Virus record (IMG/VR): IMGVR_UViG_3300037725_000018
Span: 1-64,000 of that record
Length of the DNA stretch: 64,000 bases
Reading direction: 5' to 3' (one strand)
Position 1 is the first letter of the stretch; each line of letters opens with the position of its first letter. The notes below the pieces were generated by a model. That model saw only the letters and a program-made list of their open reading frames with translations. It was not told where the DNA came from and did no database searches. This document shows positions 329 to 61,126 of the stretch, piece by piece. Both the position numbers and the translations under genes were made by a program.

Positions 329-350
329 AGTATTTTTGTGTTGTTTTCAC

Positions 351-361
351 TTTATATATAG
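351..361 (-). promoter_or_regulatory. Candidate late promoter CTATATATAAA
   Basis: Exact motif copy in the intergenic gap upstream of 62..328; recurs upstream of other late genes. Confidence 0.55.
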
Positions 362-6111: not shown

Positions 6112-6139
6112 TCTTCACACAAAGTTTAAATGGTTCACA

Positions 6140-6149
6140 CTATATATAG
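6140..6149. promoter_or_regulatory. Palindromic late-promoter-like site CTATATATAG between divergent genes
   Basis: Perfect 10-bp palindrome, about 30 nt from the 6111 (-) start and about 40 nt from the 6188 (+) start. Confidence 0.5.
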
Positions 6150-14777: not shown

Positions 14778-16274
14778 GTGCCTAACAAGGAAGCCCCTTT
14801 ATCACAAAGCAAACAGGTTATGTCTTTTGACTGGAGCGATTACCAGAAACGGATCTTCGATTGGGGAATCAACGGGTCCGGAAACGCGGTTGTGGACGCA
14901 AAGGCCGGAAGCGGAAAAACAACCACGCTTATTGAGCTTGCACGTCGAATCAAAGAAGAGCGTGGAGAGGGTGGAGTTTTTGTTGCGTTCAACAAACACA
15001 TCGAGCGCGAACTCTCTGACAAGCTTTCCGATACCGATTTCATTGCAAAGACCGTCCACTCTTGCGGTTTCGGTGCAATCCGCTACGCCGGGTACGACGT
15101 TGACGTAAACTCTGATAAAATCAAAGACATCGTCAACGCCGTTACGTCCGATATGGCGTTCAAGAAAAACAAAAAGACGGTAAAGGCCAACCTTCGAAAC
15201 ATCGTTGACCTTGTTCGGCTCAATCTTGCGGACCCGTCCGATAAAAGCGAAGTTTTGGACGTTGCCCGTCACCACGGAATTTCCATTGAAGAGATTTTCC
15301 CGCTTATCGAAACGGTGATTAACCGTTCAAACAAGATTGCAAAAGAAAACGGGGAAATTGACTTCACCGACATGATTTATCTTCCGGTGAAGTGGAACCT
15401 TTCGATGTACCAAAACAAGTGGGTCTTCGTGGATGAAGCACAGGACCTAAACACTTGCACGCGCCGGGTGATTGACAAGATGCTTCGTCGGGACGGTCGC
15501 GCAATTTTCGTGGGAGATCCCCGTCAAGCCATTTACGGTTTCGCGGGTGCGGATTCGGATTCTTTCGAGCAGATCAAAGAAGAGTTTGAAACAACCGAAC
15601 TTCCGCTAAACATCACCTACCGTTGCCCGAAAAGCCACGTTGAAAACGTGCAACGCATTGTTCCGGAAATCGAGCCCCGTGAAAACGCCCCGGAAGGTAA
15701 AATCATCGAAGACAAGATGGACAGCCTACCGAACATTGCCGAAAGTGGGGATTACGTTTTGTGCCGCACAAACGCTCCGCTTATCCGGAATTGCATCCGT
15801 CTAATCAAGAACGGACAGCCTGCTCACGTGGTCGGACGAAACATCAAGCGGGGCCTTCTTCAAATTGCAAACCGGATTGATTTTGATAACTTCAACGAAA
15901 GCGTTCGTTCTTACTACCAAAGCAAGCGAGAGAAGCTTCTAGAGAACGATACGTCCGAAGAAAAGCTTCGGGCCTTCCGGGATAAGGTAGACGCCATTAA
16001 AACCGTCTACGGCGAATATGACGTTTCCACAAAGCGGGGTCTAAAAAGCAAGATCAAGTCCCTGTTCAAAGAAACGCCCGATTCGGTGAAGCTTATGACC
16101 GCACACAAGGCGAAGGGCCTTGAAAACGACCGGATTATCATCATCCGAACCGATCTTATGCCGCTTCGTTGGAAGGGTCAAAAGAAGTGGCAGGCAGAGC
16201 AGGAGATGAACCTGAAATATACAGCCGAAACTCGCTCTACGGATACGTTAATCTTCCTTCACCCTGAAAACTAA
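14778..16274 (+). CDS. UvrD/Rep-like superfamily 1 helicase
   Basis: AKAGSGKTT, VFVDEAQD, VGDPRQAIYGFAGA, TYRCPKS, TAHKAKGLE and YTAETRS (motif VI). Confidence 0.92.
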   Translation: MPNKEAPLSQSKQVMSFDWSDYQKRIFDWGINGSGNAVVDAKAGSGKTTTLIELARRIKEERGEGGVFVAFNKHIERELSDKLSDTDFIAKTVHSCGFGAIRYAGYDVDVNSDKIKDIVNAVTSDMAFKKNKKTVKANLRNIVDLVRLNLADPSDKSEVLDVARHHGISIEEIFPLIETVINRSNKIAKENGEIDFTDMIYLPVKWNLSMYQNKWVFVDEAQDLNTCTRRVIDKMLRRDGRAIFVGDPRQAIYGFAGADSDSFEQIKEEFETTELPLNITYRCPKSHVENVQRIVPEIEPRENAPEGKIIEDKMDSLPNIAESGDYVLCRTNAPLIRNCIRLIKNGQPAHVVGRNIKRGLLQIANRIDFDNFNESVRSYYQSKREKLLENDTSEEKLRAFRDKVDAIKTVYGEYDVSTKRGLKSKIKSLFKETPDSVKLMTAHKAKGLENDRIIIIRTDLMPLRWKGQKKWQAEQEMNLKYTAETRSTDTLIFLHPEN

Positions 16275-16365
16275 TTACAAGTGTCAGCCGGGGTTGCGGG
16301 TACATCTTGATAGGTGTACCCGCAACTTATATTAGAGACGGTTTTACGTGATACGTCGAACCGCT
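16230..16365 (+). repeat. Diverged direct repeat, copy 1 (helicase tail + hairpin + endonuclease 3' end)
   Basis: Encodes TRSTDTLIFLHPEN* on +; 16291-16365 matches 17487-17561 at 62/75 nt. Confidence 0.9.
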
Positions 16366-17371
16366 CACCAATCTCAGATTGTGTCATATCGGATTCTTCA
16401 AGAAGGTACTTTATCTCCCCGGCTTCTTTTTTTGAAAGCGCAGGTGTCTTAGGTTTTTTCAAATCTGGAATGGGTTGGGGCTTGGAAGGTTTTACACCTT
16501 CATGAATCTTACCAACATTGATTTCAGAAATGGTTTGGCTTTTTACGTCGTAATGTTTAGCAACAGACTTTTGGGTAAACTTGGTATTATTCAAAAGCCA
16601 TTTGATTTCTGAAACTTGCTCTTTGGACAGCTTGTAGGTCTTCTTCGGATCTAAAAAAACTTCTTGGGGCTTACGTGGCTTCACATCCGTATATCTTTTC
16701 CCGGTCTTGATGCAGGATATGGTATAGCTTGTAACGTCGTAGAGATCACCTATGTCCTTTTGAGAAGCATCCGTATTTTCTATAAGCCATTTGGCTTCGG
16801 CAACCTGTTTCTTGGTCATTCCCAATTTATTTGGTTTTGGAATTGATTCGGGTTTTGATGGTTCAACACGTATCCAGTTTCTTTCTTTGATAATATCGCA
16901 AATAGCCTGTGCCGATACTCCGTATTTATTTGCAAGCTGTTTTTGGGTACATTCGGTGTTTTTAACGAGCCATTTGATTTCGGCTACACTCTCTTCATCT
17001 AACAAAGAAAGTGGTGAATCACTACCATAAGGTGTTTGTCCCCCATAGGCGGTTCGAATAATGTTAGTGAGTTGATCAAAAATATAATCATCATCTAGAA
17101 CAAGTTGTTCTAGCTCTTTTGCCTCTTCTAAGGTCAGGTCAGTTGCAAGTTTTCTGCCGTAACATTTCCAACCGTTTTGCTTGCACTTTTTAATCGTAGA
17201 CGATTTGTGTGGATTTACATCGTACCGTAAACTGCTTTCAGAAAAGTGTCTATTCATTCTTCTTCCGGTTCCGCGCCCTACATAAAACGTCTTCGGAACA
17301 AAGTTATTTCGGGGCCGTTCGTGTACTAGAGCATAAACGTAGTATCTTCTATTAGAATCATCCATAGTCAA
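16271..17371 (-). CDS. GIY-YIG (LEM-3-like) endonuclease with four C-terminal HTH repeats
   Basis: YYVYAL...FYVGRG...RMNRH, EEAKELE and LTN; four repeats of K.(V/A).EIKWL...TQ..I...Y.V....IS.I; ATG at 17365. Confidence 0.85.
   Translation of the reverse strand: MTMDDSNRRYYVYALVHERPRNNFVPKTFYVGRGTGRRMNRHFSESSLRYDVNPHKSSTIKKCKQNGWKCYGRKLATDLTLEEAKELEQLVLDDDYIFDQLTNIIRTAYGGQTPYGSDSPLSLLDEESVAEIKWLVKNTECTQKQLANKYGVSAQAICDIIKERNWIRVEPSKPESIPKPNKLGMTKKQVAEAKWLIENTDASQKDIGDLYDVTSYTISCIKTGKRYTDVKPRKPQEVFLDPKKTYKLSKEQVSEIKWLLNNTKFTQKSVAKHYDVKSQTISEINVGKIHEGVKPSKPQPIPDLKKPKTPALSKKEAGEIKYLLEESDMTQSEIGERFDVSRKTVSNISCGYTYQDVPATPADTCN
16291..16328 (+). terminator. 17-bp stem-loop after the helicase stop (terminator or processing element)
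   Basis: gggttgcgggtacatct-tgat-aggtgtacccgcaactt; G-U pairs favour the + strand; U-tract is weak. Confidence 0.6.
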
Positions 17372-17395
17372 GTTCAGTTCTTGTTAATGTTCACA

Positions 17396-17406
17396 TTTAT
17401 ATATAG
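17396..17406 (-). promoter_or_regulatory. Candidate late promoter driving the endonuclease
   Basis: Exact CTATATATAAA, 31 nt upstream of the endonuclease ATG. Confidence 0.55.
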
Positions 17407-17428
17407 TATGATTGCCCGGTTTACTCAC

Positions 17429-17561
17429 ACAAGATCAACCGACACACTCATTCTTCTTCACCCCGAAAATTAATCGGTATTGATTGAAGCTGTGGGCACA
17501 TCTTGATAGGTGTGCCCACAGTTTATATTAGAGACGGTTTTACGGGATACGCCGAGCCGCC
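17429..17561 (+). repeat. Diverged direct repeat, copy 2 (displaced helicase tail + hairpin + endonuclease stub)
   Basis: Encodes TRSTDTLILLHPEN* on +; hairpin at 17487-17524. Confidence 0.9.
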
Positions 17562-17565
17562 TTTT
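17470..17565 (-). pseudogene. 3' remnant of a related endonuclease (last HTH only)
   Basis: KRRLGVSRKTVSNINCGHTYQDVPTASINTD* versus intact ERFDVSRKTVSNISCGYTYQDVPATPADTCN*; preceded by an in-frame TAA, no start codon. Confidence 0.8.
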
Positions 17566-17594
17566 TTACATGCACGGATACGATTTACTCGAAA

Positions 17595-18238
17595 ATGGTC
17601 ATAATTCAAACAAAAGAAGACCTCTCAAAAGAAGAGGTATACCCCGAGCATCATGGGAAAAATGAAATTTGGTTTAAAGATTCGATTAATGGCAATCTTC
17701 GTTTAAGCCAAGGCAAGATTGACCTTTTAAAAGACACCTATATTCAAGTCGATGAAAGAAAAATTTGGGTTTCCGGATGTGACTTCACGTACAGACACAG
17801 GCTTTCAAAATACAAAGGCCAATGGGACCGTTGGGGCATGAGGGTACGAAGAAGCTTCCATAGAAAAGACAGAAGAAAAGCCTTGCCAATTTGCGAACGA
17901 CACTTTCGGCTTCGTCGGTTAGATAAGCAACATAAACAAGCGAAAAAATACGGAAATATTTTAAAGAGTTGGGGTGTCCACTAATGCTTATATTTCTTGA
18001 AACAAATTCAGAGATTATAGAACTTACAAATGTTGGATTCGATTTTTCAAGCGCAGGCGTCTTTTCCTGTTGTAAAGACTATTCCGGAAGGTGTCATTAC
18101 ATGTTTGAACGCCCGATAGGAAATGGCACAATGACCTTCAAAGGAAGTAATATTTACGTGCGTTACCGGGTTAGAAAGTTTTGCAAAGAGGGCATGGGAA
18201 AGTCTGTGCCAATAAAATTTAAAGACTCTGTAAATTGA
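17595..18238 (+). CDS. Two hypothetical proteins (17595-17984, 17984-18238)
   Basis: Coupled ORFs with a TAATG overlap. Confidence 0.65.
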
Positions 18239-18314
18239 TTCTCTTACTTGGAACCAACCTCATGCACTTGCATTTAAGTATTGCGATTTTGAAAGAGAGA
18301 AACCTCCTGTTACG

Positions 18315-18629
18315 ATGGAAACTGAAGTTGACGGACTTTGCCACCTTCTTGCCCACGAGATCAACAAGCGGATTTCGGGGACTGTGATTGGAACCACCAC
18401 TCCTTCCGGTCGGACGTGGCACTACGCCTTTTTGACCGAAGATGGGTCCGTGGTTGACAAGCACGGTTTTCATGATTCGGTTGATTCATTTTTGGCAAAG
18501 GCCAAAGACAGTTTCGGTCGAGAAGATTTCTCAATTACCGAAGAATCCATTTCAAAAGAAATGGTGGATATATTTACCGAAGATGAAAAGCTTCGGGCTT
18601 CAACCTACGCAGAAAACCTTCTTAACTAA
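18315..18629 (+). CDS. Small protein with Cys-His-Asp (papain/transglutaminase-like) motif
   Basis: GLCHLLA...WHYAF...VVDKHG. Confidence 0.5.
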   Translation: METEVDGLCHLLAHEINKRISGTVIGTTTPSGRTWHYAFLTEDGSVVDKHGFHDSVDSFLAKAKDSFGREDFSITEESISKEMVDIFTEDEKLRASTYAENLLN

Positions 18630-18642
18630 GAAAAACACGTCC

Positions 18643-19695
18643 ATGTATCCAATTGGAAAAAAGGAAATTCAAAAGGCCGCAAGTCGGCTTGGAATTGAAA
18701 TTTCAAACGAGACGCCTTCCCCCGGAGACGCGTATCTTTGTGGAAGGAACACAAGCGTTCAAATGTTTACGTGCAATCGTGTTGAAAACGGCTGCGTGTT
18801 TCCGGAGGAAAGAGGATACCCATACAACACCGCAGAGTGCTATAAGGTAAAGACGTGACCCAACACACTTGCTAAAAGAGATCGCCCGTCTTAGAGGCTG
18901 TAAGAGGCTTCTAAGGTTAATCTACATACATGAAGAAAATAAAAGAACAATGACAATAGAAAGTGCAATTCAAGTACACAAGTTCTTAAAAGAGAATCCC
19001 GGTTTTCTTGACGGGAGAATTTCTTGCACCCTGTCTAAATCAAAACACAAAGACAGAGAAGACTCGTTTTTCAGTAGAGGATACACCGGAGCAATTTTAA
19101 AAGAAGAGATTGGTTTTCTTTTTTCTCAAACCGATGATTATTCTTCGGTTCACGGAGTTGCTGCAGAATTTGAAAACAGCGAAGTTTCTCGCACGATGAA
19201 GCACTCTGATTTTGATGAAATGATTAAAGAGGTTCATTTTTCCGGGACCGTAGAACACGTCTTGAACAAAATTTCTAGGTGGGAATCAAACGGCAAGTTC
19301 AAAAACGTAACGACAACCGAAAACTCTGTTCTCTTGTGGCCGAATGAAGACCGTTGGCCTGTAAAATATGATAACTATCCTATCAAATTTAAGGTTAAAT
19401 CAGTTGAAAAGGAGCGGAAGTTTCTGCTTTTCAAAAAGAAACCGTTTCGTTCTTACCACGTATTTCGGTTTATCTCTTCATGTATAGAAGACCGAATGTA
19501 TTCGCTTCCAAACCTTAACTAAAAGACCGGATGATAATTGTGGTCATTGAGCGGGAAGAACCGATAGAACATTGGTATGACGTAAGAGAACAAAATTTTG
19601 AAAATGTGGCACTTGTAAATCTTGTTAGAGGCGACAAAAAGCAAGTGCGAATATACGAAAACCTAATCAAGAAAGACTTCAACGAAAACTGGTAG
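18643..19695 (+). CDS. Three hypothetical proteins (18643-18858, 18950-19522, 19531-19695)
   Basis: Co-oriented ORFs; likely ATG starts chosen manually; the last is below the ORF-track cutoff. Confidence 0.55.
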
Positions 19696-25840: not shown

Positions 25841-27256
25841 TTACCGATTCTCAATTCCGGCAAGCTTCTTCATTCTTTCAGGGAAGCTTGCGTCTTCGTT
25901 GAGAATCTGTTTTGTCTCATTTGAAGAAGGACGTGTAGAGCCTTGTTGTCTAGAGGAACTTAGGTTAATTTGCTCTGTTAGACTCTCGGCTTGGTCCTTC
26001 TTGGTCCGTTGACTAGACTGACTTGCGGAGTCGGTAAGGTTCTCTGCAAGGTTTGTGTATGTCAACTTGACCTCACGAATATTTTGTGCTCGATCAAAGG
26101 AATCGATAACACGTTTCTTTTGGCGTTCGTTAAGGTCGAACGCATTGGTAAGCTTATTCGTGTAGAGCAGTTTGCTATTAATGAGATTAACCTCATTCAT
26201 TTCTTCTCGCAGGATTTTGAAAGCCTGTCGAAATTCGTCTAGCTGCTCTTTAAGCTTTTCGTTTTCACGACGAAGACTTCGGTAAGACTCTTCCATTTCG
26301 TCTTCGTCTTCCATTTCGTCGTAATCCATTTCTTCCATGTCGTCTTCCTCTTCAAGAAGAAGATCGCCATAGCTTACGTAAGATTCGCCAATGGTAGAAT
26401 CCGGCATGTCCTCTGCTTCGTAGTCCATCTCTCCGTATCCGTAGCCATAATCAAACTCTACGTAGTCGTCAGACGTGTCCATAAGATCGTCTACAACTTG
26501 GTCGTATGGACCGGAAACTGCGCTTGGCTCTTGCATTGGCTCGTCTCGGTCAACAGACGTTACGCCGTATTCACGAAGCGTACTTTCGAGTTCATCCACG
26601 TCGATTTCGTACATTACGTCGTCACCGCCGCTTCTGGAACGACCATTTTCAAGATCGTTAAGAAACTCGTCAATTTGTCGGTCTAGATCCCTTTCTTCAA
26701 TGTCCTCTTCAAGTTCGGATACAACTCGGTCTAGATCCAACTTCTCGTGAACGTCGTCCATTGCCATTGCTCCGTATCCGTCTTCGTGGTCGTCCACGTC
26801 AAGCATTGGAGCATCTTCGTGGCCTCCGTCGTGTTGAACCTCGTCGTAAGAAAGCTCGTCTGCAAGATCCGGGTCGCGGTGGCGCTCGCCTCCCGCAACC
26901 TCTTCATCGAGTTCAGAGAGGAAGTTTGCGATATTGTCCCAATCGCGCTCGGAAAGTCCAAAGGACTCTTCCATATCTTCTTCTTCCTCGTCCTCTTCTT
27001 CGTCTTCTTCGTCTTCATCGTCAAGGTCCATTTCGACCTCTTCTTCATCTTCCATGTCTTCCATGTCTTCTTCGTCGTAGTCACCTTCCATTTCTTCTTC
27101 GGCTTCCCGTTGAAGTTGGTCGGCTACAACTTGACGAATCTTTGGCGTGAAAGCTTCACGAAGATAGTCAAAAGCGTTTTCTTTTGCTACTTCTCGAAGC
27201 GTTTTGGCGTCAGCCATCGCTTCTTTGAGCATTTCACTATCTGTTTGATCTTTCAT
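25841..27256 (-). CDS. Prohead core scaffold protein (gp22-like)
   Basis: LKEAMADAKTLREVA N-terminus, acidic middle and NEVNLINSKLLY...FDRA C-domain; directly upstream of MCP. Confidence 0.8.
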   Translation of the reverse strand: MKDQTDSEMLKEAMADAKTLREVAKENAFDYLREAFTPKIRQVVADQLQREAEEEMEGDYDEEDMEDMEDEEEVEMDLDDEDEEDEEEDEEEEDMEESFGLSERDWDNIANFLSELDEEVAGGERHRDPDLADELSYDEVQHDGGHEDAPMLDVDDHEDGYGAMAMDDVHEKLDLDRVVSELEEDIEERDLDRQIDEFLNDLENGRSRSGGDDVMYEIDVDELESTLREYGVTSVDRDEPMQEPSAVSGPYDQVVDDLMDTSDDYVEFDYGYGYGEMDYEAEDMPDSTIGESYVSYGDLLLEEEDDMEEMDYDEMEDEDEMEESYRSLRRENEKLKEQLDEFRQAFKILREEMNEVNLINSKLLYTNKLTNAFDLNERQKKRVIDSFDRAQNIREVKLTYTNLAENLTDSASQSSQRTKKDQAESLTEQINLSSSRQQGSTRPSSNETKQILNEDASFPERMKKLAGIENR

Positions 27257-29877: not shown

Positions 29878-32309
29878 TTATTCTTGGCCGCTTGACACGT
29901 CGAAGTAGCGGTCAAGAATCATTGCAATATCTTCATATAGGGCAGAAAGACGTTCTCGGTTCTTTTGCGTCTTTTCTGCCGTTTTTTCAAACTTGTTTAA
30001 ATATTTTTTGAGTTCTCTCATATTGCGGTTAACCGTTACGTTGTCAAACGGCGTGTTCTTTTCGTTTAAATACCGCTTGGCGTACTTAGCAACCGCATGA
30101 AGTTTCTTTGAAAGCTTGTTTAAATTTCCTTCATTATATATATACTTGTCGTTTTCGTGAAAATTTTTTAGCTCACGAAAGAGGATTTTCTTTTGGTCTT
30201 CGGAAAGATTGCCTTCCGATTCAAACCAGTTTTCGTTTGAAGACTCTTTTTTCTGTTCTTCGACCAAAAGTGAAACAAGCTTATCAAATTTCATGAGATT
30301 TTCTTTTTACTTCAGTCTTATATATCTACCACTCTTTCCTTGTTGCCATTCTTGACAAATCTGTAGTCGTATATGCTTTCTTCCCCGGCCTGTGGCCTTT
30401 CGATTTCGTACCCGTTGTTTTTAGCCCACATCTTCATCTTCTCAAAAGCGTGGGTTAAATTAGACCCTCTTGTTATGTGCTCGATTTCATAGTCTTTTTC
30501 TTTTGGAGCAGTAAGCCCAAGCCTCACAACGTCAGAAAAAAGCTTTTCGCGTAAGATATCCTTAAAAGTAATCATTATCCATCAAACCATAATTCAGCAA
30601 CTTGACCGTCAAATCTAACTTTATTTAAGTCACTTCTTTTAGCAATGGAAGAAAGCATATTCGGATTCAAGGTTAGACCACCGGGAAGAGTCGAAGGGTT
30701 AATCTCTACTATATAAATAGGTTCGCCCATTCGCATATCTTCCTTATAAACTTTGTAGCGAGAGGTATCACCTAAACCCATAGTTTGAAGAGCAGAGTCT
30801 ATCTTCCGGGGAACACTAGGCCCGGACACTGTTTCTTGTTCAGACAAAACCTTTTTTGTTTCTTCACGAACTATTTTCTGAAGTTTTTGGTTACTAATTT
30901 TCATTTGTCTTTTTGGTTTAGTGTTTTTTTTAATCATTCTCCCCGTTTGGGCCTGTTCTCCAATCTTCACGGCCCAAATACTCGTCTTTTAGCGAAGCGC
31001 AAAATGCTTCCGGGTCGTCAAGCTCGTCTTCCATTTTGTCCATACAATTTGAGAAAAACCCTTCTGTGTCGTCTTTTGTTTTTCCTGTAAGGCTTCTAGC
31101 AAAGCTTTGAAGGCTTTCTTCGTCCCATCCGGGGGGAAGGTTTTCCCATCCTATGTACGGATTCTCTTCCGCTAACAAATGTTCTTTAATATACGCTCTT
31201 GCTTTTCTTCGAAAAGCCTCTTCTTTTACTTCCGGGGGAATGTCGTCGTGACCAGTTTCGGCAAAATCTTTTGCATCTTCCATCGAAATGTCGTCAGCGA
31301 TAGACTTGATCTTTTCTGCCAAGTCGTCGTCAAGCTCGCCCAAGTCAAGTTCTCCTTGCTTGTAAGCGTAAACCATTCCGAAAAGCCTCTGTTGGGTTTC
31401 AGACTTTGATTTTTCGTTTACAACAGATTCATCAAGCCGTTCTCTTGATTTTGGGTGCATCCCAATCCTACCAAAGTATTCCCGGTTAAGCTCTCGGATT
31501 GCCTTTTTTGGGTTTTGAAGAAGCATGTCTACCTCTTCTTCGTTGATGTAGTAAGATCCGGCCCCTTCAATACCTTTATCAATGAACCTGTAGTCCTTGT
31601 GATAACCTCTAGCGGCCTTTAGCCCAAAGATAGTATATGGACCTTCAAACTCGCTTTCCTCTAGAGGAACGGCCACTAAAACGTTCATCGGCTCGCTGTA
31701 GTGAACTTCTTCGAATGCATCTTCTTGGTGAAGCATCCGATACGTCGTGTTGTACAAGTCGGTAATTTCTTGGAAGGTGTCCGTATACGGCCTGCCGGGG
31801 TTATACTCTCTGTAGTGGCTAAACGGAGAACGCACAGGTCGTCCACGATTTGCATAATACGCCTCGTGAATCAAACTTCTAATGAAATCTTTACTGTTCA
31901 TATCTTTTTACTGGTTTTCTAAAGTTCCTTCGGCTGTTGACTTCATTTCTTCGATGAACTGCTCTACGGATTCAACGTCAAACTCTCCTGCCGCGTCGGA
32001 AACGTCGTTAACAATTTCTTCAATTGAAACGGTTGGAAAACTTGACGTGGTTGTTTTGAACCGAAGAATTTGCTTGCCCCGAAGGTCGGGGTTTTGAAGA
32101 GAAAAAGAAATTTGAAGAACGCTTCTAGATCGGCCAAAGTATTCTACGGTAACGTCAAACCCTTCATACGTTCCGTTATAGGTGAAATACGTTCCGGCCC
32201 TCCCTGAACGATATAGGTCCATTTCTTCACCTAGGTTTTCCCCAAGCGTTCGAAGCTCTTTTTCAAGTTCGGAAAACGCCTCTTTAAGTAAACTGTTGAG
32301 CCGAATCAT
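29878..32309 (-). CDS. Five leader-bearing head-cluster proteins (29878-30294, 30318-30575, 30575-30904, 30930-31901, 31908-32309)
   Basis: Leaders MKFDKLVSLLVE, MITFKDILRE, MKISNQKLQKIVREE, MNSKDFIRSLIHE and MIRLNSLLKE; 30930 contains a DUF3008-like KSKSETQQRLFGM module. Confidence 0.7.
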
Positions 32310-35758: not shown

Positions 35759-35826
35759 CTTAGGTTTTTGTTAAATCTTCTTCACTTTATATATAGAAAA
35801 GTTACGTGCTCCTTTGTAAAAGAGTG

Positions 35827-37731
35827 TTACAAGGTTTCATCTAGCAATTCTTTGAGTCTATCATTTTTTTCTTCAAGGGCTGACTCGTCCATATATGTAT
35901 CTTTCATATGATCTTCGTTTCCTTCGTCTTCTTTGTCTTCGTCTTCGGTGTATGTTTCATGAATGAGCCGTCTTTTTCTGTTGAAATGTTTCTCTAAACT
36001 TGAAGAAAGAGCCATTGGGCTTCCTCCTTGGTAGTTGTGAGTTATATCCGAAGACTTGTTTCTAAGTTGATTTGAAAGGTCTTTCATTCCTGAAACATCA
36101 TCGTCTCCGCCTCCAAGATCATTTCCACCTTCATCTTTATCTAAGTCTTCTAGTTCGTCTTCGGTGTTGTCAATGTCGAAGTTCTGGATTTGTGAGCTTC
36201 CACTCATTGCCAAATCACTTGGCGTCCCGTAACTCATTCCCGTCTTTACGGGATCGTTGCCTTCACGTTCGATTTGATCCTTTCGGAAGTTTCTCTTCCA
36301 GTCCCGAACCTTCTCTTTGTATTCTTCATCGATTTCGTCTTCGGACATGTTAAACACTTCCTTTGCAATCTTTTCATCCGATAGGAAAGGCATTTCTCGC
36401 ATGTCACGCGCAAGACTAACCTTCCGGCTAAGAAACTCAATCCGTTCTTGTTCTGCAACAATGCTTGGGTTTGTAAACGAGAAGTTAAAGTCAATAAGAT
36501 CACTTCCCCTGTACCCTCGGACATACAGGTGAACAACGGCGATTTTTTTCAACTCTCTTGCAATAGACCGTTGAAGGTTTTCTACGGCGTTAGAAAACTT
36601 AATGGACTCTTGGGCAAGAGTGGCTTTTCCTTGAATTTCTTGTTCGTATCCTAAGAAAGCATTTGGAATCTTTAAAGCCGACATAAGCTTCTTCCGAAGA
36701 TACTCAACGTCTTCCATCGCTTGATATTGAAGGCCCTGAAGACTTTGAATTTCCGTTCCGGATTGGTTTCCCCGAACCGGAAGAAAAAAGTCTTCAAGCA
36801 TATTCTGCATGTTGAATTCCAAGTTGTATTGTCCCGTTTCCGGGTCAACAAGCGGGGTTTGCTGAATGTCGTTCATTACGTCGTTCATATAGCTTTCAAT
36901 TGCGTCAGGTTCGATGTTCCCAACGTCAATTTTGAAAACCCGCTTCTCCGGTGCCCTCATGATCCGGTGAATCAACATAGCCTCTTCCATCAAAGAAAGC
37001 TGTTGCCAAATCTTTCGGCCATTTTCAATGATGCTCTTCCCGTACGGAAAAAAGTTCCCGTCATTTATGAATCGAAAGTGTGCAACTTCCCATTCTTCAA
37101 AAGCAACTTGCCCTTGCGTGCTGCTTGTGTATGCGGACCCGTGGGCATTCCCTTGATAGACAAATTTAATCTCGTCTCCGTGGGTATCTTCTTGTCTTAC
37201 AATTTCATACGGGGAAAGTGGGGTAACTTTTGTCACTCCAACGTCTTCGTTGATCGTCATGTGAAGAAACAAGTCCCCATACTTTGCAATTGAGCGTGCC
37301 CACCACCGGGCGTTAAAATTCACATCCAGAATATTGAAAACTAAATTTTCAAGAACAGACTTGATTTCCCCATTTTCACACTTTACATCCAAAATCTGTC
37401 CATATGCGTCTTTAGTTGCAACTTCGTTTGCGTAAATATCAAGAGCAGATGCAATAATCGGGTCTTGGTCCATATCTTCATAGGTTTGAAAAAGCTCAAA
37501 CCTGTTTGCATGAAGAGCCTGTGAAGACGAGTATCCGCTTGAAGAGTAATGGCTTTGCCCGGACCCATAAAGCTTTTTGAAACGCCCGTCCGCAAGGTCT
37601 TGTGAAATAGATTGGCTACTACGTAAGTCTGCCGTTGTCACGTCCTCTCCATCCGAAGAGCGGACAATCACCTCGCTGGAAAAGAGACGTGAGAGGGCAT
37701 TTCTAATACTTCCTCTTGACTTTTCTGCCAT
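35827..37731 (-). CDS. Portal protein (T4 gp20-like)
   Basis: YEDMDQDPIIASALDI, LMEEAMLIHRIMRAPEKRVFKIDVGN and MLEDFFLPVR. Confidence 0.95.
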   Translation of the reverse strand: MAEKSRGSIRNALSRLFSSEVIVRSSDGEDVTTADLRSSQSISQDLADGRFKKLYGSGQSHYSSSGYSSSQALHANRFELFQTYEDMDQDPIIASALDIYANEVATKDAYGQILDVKCENGEIKSVLENLVFNILDVNFNARWWARSIAKYGDLFLHMTINEDVGVTKVTPLSPYEIVRQEDTHGDEIKFVYQGNAHGSAYTSSTQGQVAFEEWEVAHFRFINDGNFFPYGKSIIENGRKIWQQLSLMEEAMLIHRIMRAPEKRVFKIDVGNIEPDAIESYMNDVMNDIQQTPLVDPETGQYNLEFNMQNMLEDFFLPVRGNQSGTEIQSLQGLQYQAMEDVEYLRKKLMSALKIPNAFLGYEQEIQGKATLAQESIKFSNAVENLQRSIARELKKIAVVHLYVRGYRGSDLIDFNFSFTNPSIVAEQERIEFLSRKVSLARDMREMPFLSDEKIAKEVFNMSEDEIDEEYKEKVRDWKRNFRKDQIEREGNDPVKTGMSYGTPSDLAMSGSSQIQNFDIDNTEDELEDLDKDEGGNDLGGGDDDVSGMKDLSNQLRNKSSDITHNYQGGSPMALSSSLEKHFNRKRRLIHETYTEDEDKEDEGNEDHMKDTYMDESALEEKNDRLKELLDETL

Positions 37732-45243: not shown

Positions 45244-45312
45244 AACAGTTGTGTTTTTGAATTTATCTTCACTTTATAAATAGCGAAAAAAGGTAGTAGG
45301 CTGTGTTTTATG

Positions 45313-61062: not shown

Positions 61063-61126
61063 ATTTTATTAAGTTTAAAGTGCTTTAAGTAATTTCTTCT
61101 TCATTTAATATATAGTGAACCGAAAT

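What the first reader, a model, noticed from the sequence alone, without database searches (positions are those of the whole stretch)
17470..17565. Stub of an older endonuclease records serial invasion of the same site
The displaced helicase tail overlaps the last 31 codons of a paralogous endonuclease. The tail-to-tail stop overlap is the same as in the intact element (TAG 16271-16273 against TAA 16272-16274; TAA 17470-17472 against TAA 17471-17473). So the pre-insertion allele already carried an endonuclease of this family, which decayed to just the hairpin-bearing segment. This fits the established invasion-degeneration-reinvasion cycle of homing endonucleases, visible here at one locus. 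It also suggests the hairpin is the part the phage keeps.
Basis: partly seen in the sequence, partly recalled or inferred. Interest (0 to 1): 0.6.

Follow-up and report, generated by a model that had tools for sequence, protein, structure and literature searches.

The report
Endonuclease gene relic behind phage helicase
Next to an intact selfish endonuclease gene in a 223-kb phage lies a 92-base leftover of a second copy, still joined to an old end of the helicase gene; this suggests the site was occupied at least twice, a known kind of history rarely seen this clearly at one locus.

Summary
Window 17470-17565 (minus strand) is an open 31-codon copy of the last codons of the GIY-YIG/HTH endonuclease gene at 16271-17365. 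It is joined to a displaced helicase 3' end (17414-17473) with the same 2-base stop overlap. Seven assemblies show this arrangement. Relatives give a clear anatomy. A compact 1.2-kb cassette (replacement helicase tail, endonuclease gene, its own promoter-like motif; about 16215-17413) sits inside the helicase 3' end. A sister lineage (about 90% identical) has the same cassette with the same right end. There the displaced tail is followed by an ordinary terminator, not a stub, and near-identical genomes lack the cassette. So the stub is not a by-product of insertion. The displaced tail was once functional: 11 of its 14 differences from the resident tail are synonymous, and it resembles a third lineage's native tail. 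Serial occupancy is therefore the best reading (about 0.55). No stub-only or intact older allele was found, and the order of events is not proven. The stub's core is also no more diverged from the resident gene than the sister lineage's gene is. Gene conversion or a late partial copy therefore stays open. The hairpin shows four compensatory pairs, but nothing shows selection after truncation. This is a new example of known phenomena.

The parts
14778..16274 (+). UvrD-like superfamily-1 helicase gene. Relatives' gene calls start 14 codons later, at about 14820.
   Evidence: Pfam UvrD-helicase 3e-22 and UvrD_C; PHROG DNA helicase 3e-94; thousands of homologues.
16215..16274 (+). Replacement helicase tail carried by the cassette (motif VI to the stop). 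It is now the functional end of the helicase.
   Evidence: Alignment with the cassette-free lineage C (L011) stops at about 16204, and L011's own tail aligns with 17425-17473 instead. It is 41/45 identical to the sister lineage's tails but only 29/45 to lineage C.
16271..17365 (-). Intact free-standing endonuclease gene: N-terminal GIY-YIG domain plus four HTH repeats (364 aa from the ATG at 17365; the ORF listing starts it at TTG 17371).
   Evidence: The N-terminal profile hits solved GIY-YIG proteins at 5e-14, and Pfam LEM-3_GIY-YIG scores 27.4 bits against a cut-off of 27.
16291..16328 (+). 17-bp hairpin inside the last codons of the endonuclease gene, 17 nt after the helicase stop.
   Evidence: -31.9 kcal/mol, z -5.0 as plus-strand RNA, and weaker on the minus strand. 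Paired in all three copies, with four double-sided changes.
17390..17406 (-). Promoter-like motif of the phage, 25-30 nt upstream of the endonuclease start codon. The cassette ends 7 nt beyond it.
   Evidence: Seven similar sites against 0.9 expected. Six of them lie 20-40 nt upstream of minus-strand ORF starts.
17406..17413 (.). Right end of the cassette (junction 17413|17414). The sister lineage has the identical end.
   Evidence: Window and L016-L019 are collinear up to this point and then differ.
17414..17473 (+). Displaced former 3' end of the helicase gene (20 codons including the stop; clear part 17429-17473).
   Evidence: 14 differences in 45 nt from the resident tail, by Nei-Gojobori counting 11 synonymous and 3 non-synonymous (pS about 1, pN 0.09). 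10 of the 14 match lineage C's native tail (P 0.004).
17470..17565 (-). The stub: the last 31 codons plus stop of a second endonuclease gene copy. It has no start codon and a stop directly upstream. Homology is clear over 17473-17561.
17487..17524 (+). Hairpin of the stub: 17 bp, intact, with three fully compensated pairs relative to the resident copy.
   Evidence: -36.7 kcal/mol, z -7.5; pair counts.
17562..17594 (+). T-run and leader shared with the sister lineage. There the T-run is the tail of the native helicase terminator.
17595..17984 (+). Downstream 129-aa gene of unknown function. It marks the right flank and is absent from lineage C.

Best explanation
The segment is a true relic of a second copy of the same GIY-YIG/HTH homing-endonuclease gene family. 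That copy once sat convergently behind the helicase gene, stop codon against stop codon. This is how the family sits in distant relatives. Most of it was deleted. What remains is its last roughly 30 codons, still fused to the helicase 3' end it used to face. The present endonuclease gene belongs to a compact 1.2-kb cassette (about 16215-17413). The cassette carries its own copy of the helicase's last 20 codons, the endonuclease gene and a phage-type promoter-like motif. It was pasted into the helicase reading frame just before motif VI. The helicase therefore now ends in the cassette's tail, and the old tail and stub were pushed 1.2 kb downstream as dead sequence. Shown here: the homology, the cassette boundaries, cassette presence/absence in a near-clonal sister population, the functional past of the displaced tail, and compensatory evolution of the hairpin. 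Inferred: that the stub's gene came first, that it decayed in place, and that the endonuclease cuts cassette-free helicase alleles near motif VI.
For: (1) The stub aligns with the family-wide end of the last HTH repeat, including in homologues of 42-44% identity that lack the hairpin. (2) The sister lineage B has the same cassette with the identical right end. There the displaced tail is 45 nt and is followed by an ordinary hairpin-plus-T-run terminator, so cassette insertion does not itself create a stub. (3) B genomes with and without the cassette are 99.3-99.9% identical in the flanks. All three alleles occur in one sample (L007, L019, L026). (4) Displaced versus resident tail: synonymous sites are saturated, pN is 0.09, and 10 of the 14 differing sites match the native tail of the cassette-free lineage C. 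It served as a real helicase end in another background. (5) The window and B are uniformly about 90% identical on both sides; only 17414-17561 is replaced. (6) Both repeat copies have the same 2-base stop overlap. By my own rough estimate, an unrelated fragment would reproduce the frame and stop overlap with a chance of only about 0.1. (7) The family is found behind the helicase in L013 and L021/L022, with the gene-free counterpart L012.
Against: No stub-only allele and no intact gene matching the stub better than the resident one was found. Only three close lineages exist in the collections. The stub core is close to the resident gene: pS is 0.25, against 0.35 between the resident genes of A and B and 0.59 between the stub and B. 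The site patterns are stub=A 9, stub=B 4, A=B 18. That fits gene conversion between the two copies, or a split no older than the A/B split. The 16-19 nt between the stop and the hairpin cannot be aligned reliably. A three-sequence comparison has no root.
Confidence: 0.55

Rival explanations
1. Reverse order, or one-step capture. The cassette was already in place, as in lineage B. Later a fragment 'helicase tail plus endonuclease 3' end' from a co-infecting relative with its own copy replaced the displaced tail and terminator. This could have been a whole second gene that was then deleted, or a patch from illegitimate recombination. The stub would then be neither older nor decayed in place.
For: Lineages A and B coexist in the same samples. 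The cassette is about as diverged between A and B (about 91%) as the backbone is, which fits a single old insertion followed by change only to the right of it. The stub core has only A/B-level divergence.
Against: It needs an illegitimate junction that lands exactly at the cassette's right end, where B also has its junction. It also needs 15 extra bases of helicase-like sequence with no homology on the left to prime the exchange. That is more steps than the serial model.
Confidence: 0.2
2. Partial duplication or gene conversion of the resident gene. Only the core of the stub (hairpin plus recognition-helix codons, about 17491-17561) was copied from the resident endonuclease gene of this lineage. 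It landed next to a native displaced tail that never faced an endonuclease gene.
For: Synonymous distance is smallest to this genome's own resident gene (0.25, against 0.59 to B). Non-synonymous divergence is raised (0.16 against 0.05), as expected for a dead copy. Blocks of 22 nt and 16 nt are identical to the resident copy. The stub's branch of 18 changes is close to about 16, which I estimated from the pS values for neutral decay since the A/B split.
Against: The tail part is certainly not a copy of the resident tail. An ectopic 70-nt copy would have to land in frame and end in the same stop overlap (my rough estimate, about 0.1). No mechanism places it there. The seven stem substitutions are six in three compensated pairs plus one that leaves a G-U pair, not random decay.
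Confidence: 0.15
3. Not endonuclease-derived. The repeat is a helicase terminator module, and the endonuclease reading frame merely runs across one copy.
For: The hairpin lies where the native terminator lies in cassette-free alleles, and it is more stable in the helicase sense.
Against: The repeat includes the recognition-helix codons conserved across the protein family and in the gene's internal repeats. Cassette-free alleles L010/L026, L011 and L012 have nothing like it behind the helicase.
Confidence: 0.03

Closest known systems
Free-standing GIY-YIG homing endonucleases of T4-like phages (Seg family; mobE and segF for internal terminators), as reviewed in PMC2988022
   Same: A small nuclease gene between or at the ends of conserved essential genes. 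Presence/absence polymorphism among close relatives. An N-terminal GIY-YIG domain with a C-terminal DNA-binding part. Its own phage promoter. Terminator hairpins lying inside the endonuclease reading frame are described for mobE and segF.
   Different: The DNA-binding part here is four tandem HTH repeats. The hairpin lies at the 3' end and faces a convergent host gene. The gene travels with a replacement copy of the host gene's last 20 codons and sits inside the host reading frame. Cleavage activity is untested.
Invasion-degeneration-loss-reinvasion cycle of homing endonuclease genes (Goddard and Burt 1999, cited through PMC2988022)
   Same: Empty sites, occupied sites and a degenerate copy are seen at one site across related genomes. 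The helicase tail attached to the stub is far more diverged from the cassette-borne tail than the stub core is from the resident endonuclease gene. This points to horizontal movement of the gene.
   Different: The degenerate and intact copies lie side by side in one genome instead of in different lineages. The cycle's intermediate states (stub only, intact old gene) were not found.
'HEG islands' with fragments of essential genes in ICP1 phages (PMC10055350)
   Same: Fragments of the neighbouring essential gene lie beside nuclease genes. Nuclease genes have repeated DNA-binding domains and sit at recombination boundaries.
   Different: A different nuclease family and different phages. Here the relic also includes a piece of a nuclease gene itself, stop-to-stop with the gene fragment.
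Integrative elements that carry a replacement 3' end of their target gene (for example tRNA-gene integration)
   Same: The incoming element restores the interrupted gene with its own copy of the 3' end and leaves the old end as a flanking direct repeat.
   Different: There is no integrase. The repeat is imperfect (69-89%), and the likely mechanism is break repair or recombination. This resemblance comes from general knowledge and was not tested.

Membership tests
GIY-YIG homing endonuclease (free-standing) | GIY-YIG catalytic domain with the conserved Tyr...Tyr-x-Gly, Arg, Glu and Asn positions | tested here: met
   Y9/Y11, Y28-G30, R36, H40, E86 and N101 are invariant or nearly so in 11 family members. 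The profile hits solved GIY-YIG proteins at 4.7e-14. Pfam PF22945 scores 27.4 against a cut-off of 27 for the domain alone, and 10 of 11 members match.
GIY-YIG homing endonuclease (free-standing) | A separate DNA-binding domain | tested here: met
   Four HTH repeats; Sigma70_r4, HTH_3 and HTH_23 pass their cut-offs; PHROG HTH and endonuclease families.
GIY-YIG homing endonuclease (free-standing) | Presence/absence at a fixed site among otherwise near-identical genomes | tested here: met
   L026/L010/L028/L032 lack it and L016-L019/L027 have it, with flanks 99.3-99.9% identical. L012 against L021/L022 shows the same in a distant clade.
GIY-YIG homing endonuclease (free-standing) | Site-specific cleavage of the gene-free allele, and gene conversion in mixed infection | not testable with these tools
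   Needs enzyme assays and phage crosses.
Stub as a member of the same endonuclease family | Significant sequence homology to the family's C-terminal HTH repeat, in frame | tested here: met
   E 8e-7 and 3e-9. It aligns with the conserved recognition-helix motif of family members.
Goddard-Burt homing cycle (serial invasion) | Empty, functional and degenerate states at the same site in related lineages | tested here: inconclusive
   Empty and functional states were found. The only degenerate state is this stub, beside a functional copy. No stub-only or intact old allele was found.
Goddard-Burt homing cycle (serial invasion) | The degenerate copy is of a lineage distinct from the reinvading copy | tested here: inconclusive
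   The attached tail is clearly distinct. The core is not (pS 0.25, against 0.35 for A versus B). There is no root.
Intrinsic (rho-independent) terminator | A stable GC-rich stem-loop followed directly by a U-tract, in the sense of the terminated gene | tested here: inconclusive
   The stem is strong and stronger in the helicase sense. The following tract is only U-rich, 5-6 U in 8. The consensus scan did not call it. Termination was not measured.

The most novel reading that the evidence does not exclude
The hairpin built into the last codons of this endonuclease gene is a working terminator or 3'-end stabiliser for the helicase transcript. The selfish cassette brings it along to replace the host terminator it displaces. 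The stub would then survive because its hairpin still does a job, for example shielding the endonuclease promoter and the downstream gene from read-through. That would make it a fragment of a selfish gene domesticated as a regulatory element.
Probability: 0.2. Interest if true: 0.55.

Novelty: new member of a known kind. Interest (0 to 1): 0.4.

Why it matters
Homing endonuclease genes are thought to persist by cycling through invasion, decay, loss and reinvasion. In phages this is mostly inferred from presence/absence patterns. Here one locus holds, side by side, an intact gene, a relic of a second copy and the displaced end of the host gene. The same metagenomes hold near-identical genomes with and without the cassette. 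This gives a natural system for asking how such a cassette enters a coding region without killing an essential helicase, what its target is, and whether a hairpin written into coding sequence serves the host gene. It is a clean example, not a new principle.

Tried and rejected
(1) Exact-pattern scan for the hairpin (21 fixed bases). In viral contigs it returned only two contigs identical to the window. In JGI metagenome contigs it returned only L025, a bacterial tuf terminator that matches by chance; I estimate about 0.2-0.3 chance hits for that pattern and database size. It is not related.
(2) Protein word searches with the endonuclease, the helicase and the 129-aa neighbour, plus cluster members and their contigs. 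No stub-only or intact older allele turned up.
(3) Sensitive tblastn of the endonuclease against 17372-19000 for further remnants found nothing beyond the stub.
(4) A sliding comparison of the helicase with lineages B and C, looking for a co-conversion boundary, showed no switch upstream of about 16205.
(5) Rfam gave only a sub-threshold hairpin hit, mir-70 at 29 bits against a cut-off of 90.
(6) The idea that the endonuclease C-terminus was recruited from the native helicase terminator was rejected. The hairpin codons are the normal end of the HTH repeat in the whole family.
(7) My first structure string for the pair count was off by two columns; I corrected it.
I did not try this by another route.
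(9) I did not use the large representative-protein search. A 31-residue query has no power there, and clusters at 50% identity would merge old and new lineages.
(10) No contig taken for human was met, and no spliced models were involved.

Full report
CONTEXT. The window is the first 64 kb of a 223,357-base virus record rated complete. The region holds a UvrD-like superfamily-1 helicase gene at 14778-16274, plus strand. A convergent gene at 16271-17365 encodes an N-terminal GIY-YIG nuclease domain followed by four helix-turn-helix repeats. The GIY-YIG assignment is solid. The signature Tyr, Tyr-x-Gly, Arg, His, Glu and Asn positions are invariant or nearly so in eleven family members. A profile of the domain hits solved GIY-YIG proteins at 4.7e-14. 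The domain alone passes Pfam's cut-off.

The minus-strand frame 17473-17565 is open for 31 codons and has a stop directly upstream. It matches the last codons of the resident endonuclease at 64-66% identity, with E 8e-7 per genome and 3e-9 locally. At the DNA level it is 87% identical over 70 nt. On the plus strand, the frame ending at 17473 repeats the helicase C-terminus.
- No third copy exists in the genome.
- Clear homology stops at about 17561. The bases 17562-17567 are a T-run.
- The arrangement is 100% identical in four IMG/VR loci from two contigs (L006/L008, L007/L009) and in two Logan assemblies. It is therefore not an assembly artefact.

WHAT RELATIVES SHOW. Only three close lineages are in the collections.
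- Lineage B (L010, L016-L019, L026-L028, L032) is uniformly about 90% identical to the window on both sides of the locus.
- Lineage C (L011) is about 80% identical.

In B the same endonuclease gene (about 91% identical) lies at the same place. The sequence to the right of its start codon, including a promoter-like motif, is the same up to an identical end point, which corresponds to window 17413. Beyond that point B has a 45-nt copy of the helicase tail, followed by an ordinary stem-loop-plus-T-run terminator and no stub. Several B contigs lack the endonuclease altogether. In them the helicase runs into exactly that tail and terminator, and then into the next gene. Flanks of B contigs with and without the gene are 99.3-99.9% identical. 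All three alleles occur in one sample (L007, L019, L026).

The unit that comes and goes is therefore a compact cassette, about window 16215-17413. It consists of a replacement helicase tail, the endonuclease gene, and a promoter-like motif. That motif recurs 20-40 nt upstream of five other minus-strand ORF starts in the window. The cassette sits inside the helicase reading frame just before the codons of motif VI.

Lineage C has neither the cassette, the stub nor the 129-aa gene. Distant relatives, with helicases about 60% identical, carry endonucleases of the same family (42-44% identical) convergently just behind the helicase. They show no tail duplication. One clade has a gene-free counterpart.

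THE DISPLACED TAIL IS A FORMER WORKING GENE END FROM ANOTHER BACKGROUND. Over 45 nt it differs from the resident tail at 14 sites. By Nei-Gojobori counting 11 of these differences are synonymous and 3 non-synonymous, the latter in one conservative Phe/Leu codon change. Synonymous sites are saturated and pN is 0.09. Ten of the 14 differing sites carry the state of lineage C's native tail (P 0.004). It is 37/45 identical to C, which is about the backbone level. The resident tail and B's tails are only 29-31/45 identical to C. This excludes the idea that the whole repeat unit is a decayed copy of the resident unit.

THE STUB CORE TELLS A LESS TIDY STORY. Over the 92 nt after the stop:
- The resident genes of the window and B are 86% identical.
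- Window resident versus stub is 75%.
- B resident versus stub is 70%.

Most of the stub's extra divergence lies in the 16-19 nt next to the stop. These cannot be aligned and include a one-codon length difference. In the core of 24 codons, synonymous divergence is 0.25 between stub and window resident. It is 0.35 between the two resident genes and 0.59 between stub and B. The site patterns are stub=window 9, stub=B 4, window=B 18.

So the core is not a deep lineage. It split from the resident line at about the time the two sister lineages split, or it has since been partly homogenised with the resident copy 1.2 kb away. Three sequences give no root.

The contrast between a saturated tail and a mildly diverged endonuclease core is significant (synonymous counts, P 6e-4). 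Three readings would each explain it: the endonuclease moved between helicase backgrounds; nucleotide-level constraint acts on the hairpin region; or there was gene conversion.

THE HAIRPIN. All three copies form a 17-bp stem with a 4-nt loop. All 51 pair positions (17 pairs in 3 copies) are paired. Four pairs changed on both sides and two on one side. With only three sequences the shuffle control is weak (11 of 500 reach the observed value). The stem is more stable as plus-strand RNA, because of G-U pairs (-32 to -37 kcal/mol, z -5 to -7.5). On the minus strand it reaches only about -23 kcal/mol. It lies 17 nt after the helicase stop, where cassette-free alleles have their terminator 23 nt after the stop. 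A U-rich stretch follows it.

I infer that it terminates or stabilises the helicase transcript in place of the displaced native terminator. Terminators inside free-standing endonuclease genes are known for mobE and segF (PMC2988022). The consensus scan did not call it, and Rfam has nothing.

The compensatory changes show selection while the copies diverged. They do not show selection since truncation. The 40 nt beyond the hairpin are at least as well kept, including a 22-nt block identical to the resident copy.

MOST LIKELY HISTORY (about 0.55). An endonuclease gene of this family once sat stop-to-stop behind a helicase end of the C-like type, and most of it was deleted. A cassette carrying a different helicase tail then entered upstream of that tail. 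It entered by homologous exchange on the left and by a non-homologous join at its fixed right end. In B the same cassette end is joined to a different point of a different tail. Two joins of one cassette end are therefore recorded.

RIVALS.
- The second copy arrived after the cassette, or was captured in one step (0.2).
- Only the core was copied or converted from the resident gene (0.15).
- The repeat is not endonuclease-derived (0.03). This is contradicted by the family-wide motif, and by all cassette-free alleles.

COMPARISON WITH KNOWN SYSTEMS. The gene is a free-standing GIY-YIG homing-endonuclease-like gene. The locus fits the Goddard-Burt cycle as discussed for phages in PMC2988022. The displaced gene fragment parallels the 'fragments of essential cargo' beside nuclease genes in ICP1 phages (PMC10055350). 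Two details go beyond routine. The cassette restores the host gene with its own copy of the 3' end. A compensated hairpin is written into the nuclease's last codons. Homing activity, the target site and termination are all untested.

VERDICT. This is a clean new example of known phenomena, of moderate interest.

Noticed in passing
window 346-361, 6134-6149, 17390-17406, 30130-30145, 35781-35796, 45268-45283, 61100-61115: A recurring 16-17-nt AT-rich motif (a TATATATAAA-like box followed by GTGAA on the minus strand). In six of seven cases it lies 20-40 nt upstream of a minus-strand ORF start. There are seven sites against 0.9 expected. It is probably a promoter class of this phage, and the endonuclease gene has one.
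   Followed up: partly
window 17595-17984: A 129-aa ORF directly right of the stub has no family assignment; the only hit is a THAP zinc-finger match at E 0.01, below threshold. It is present in lineages A and B (129/136 aa) and absent from lineage C. In C the helicase is followed directly by an 89-aa gene, with no nucleotide match to the window until the 104-aa gene after it. The 129-aa ORF is an indel of unknown nature next to the mobile site.
   Followed up: partly
L025 1870-1893 (Ga0247718_1007253): The only metagenome hit to the hairpin pattern is a bacterial terminator hairpin between tuf (EF-Tu) and a tRNA-like sequence upstream of a NusG-like ORF. It has the identical 16-nt loop region. 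I judged it a chance match to a near-palindromic pattern and did not test a host link.
   Followed up: partly
window 16527-16629, 16569-16609 versus 16941-16981: The endonuclease gene contains internal DNA repeats (about 69-80% identical) that correspond to its four HTH modules. Such repeats are possible substrates for in-frame recombination that changes DNA-binding specificity, as described for ICP1 nuclease genes.
   Followed up: no
window 26291-27103 (also 35893-35958): Long runs of 9-nt-periodic TTC/GTC-rich repeats. They would encode a strongly acidic Asp/Glu-rich protein segment on the minus strand.
   Followed up: no
L013 4983-5001: In a distant relative, the 21-nt gap between the helicase stop and the endonuclease stop is mostly a run of about 13 G. 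This may be an assembly or sequencing artefact, or a slippery tract.
   Followed up: no
L012, L013, L021 (flanks of the helicase): Related large phages, including a 468-kb record, keep the helicase in a neighbourhood with HSP70-like, chorismate-mutase-like and eIF-1a-like genes. This points to a clade of huge phages with shared gene order.
   Followed up: no
L026 3581-3625 versus L027 3338-3382: In lineage B the cassette-borne helicase tail differs from the native or displaced tail only by five synonymous changes in its last 25 nt. These could make the occupied allele immune to its own nuclease, or they may simply mark a foreign donor.
   Followed up: partly
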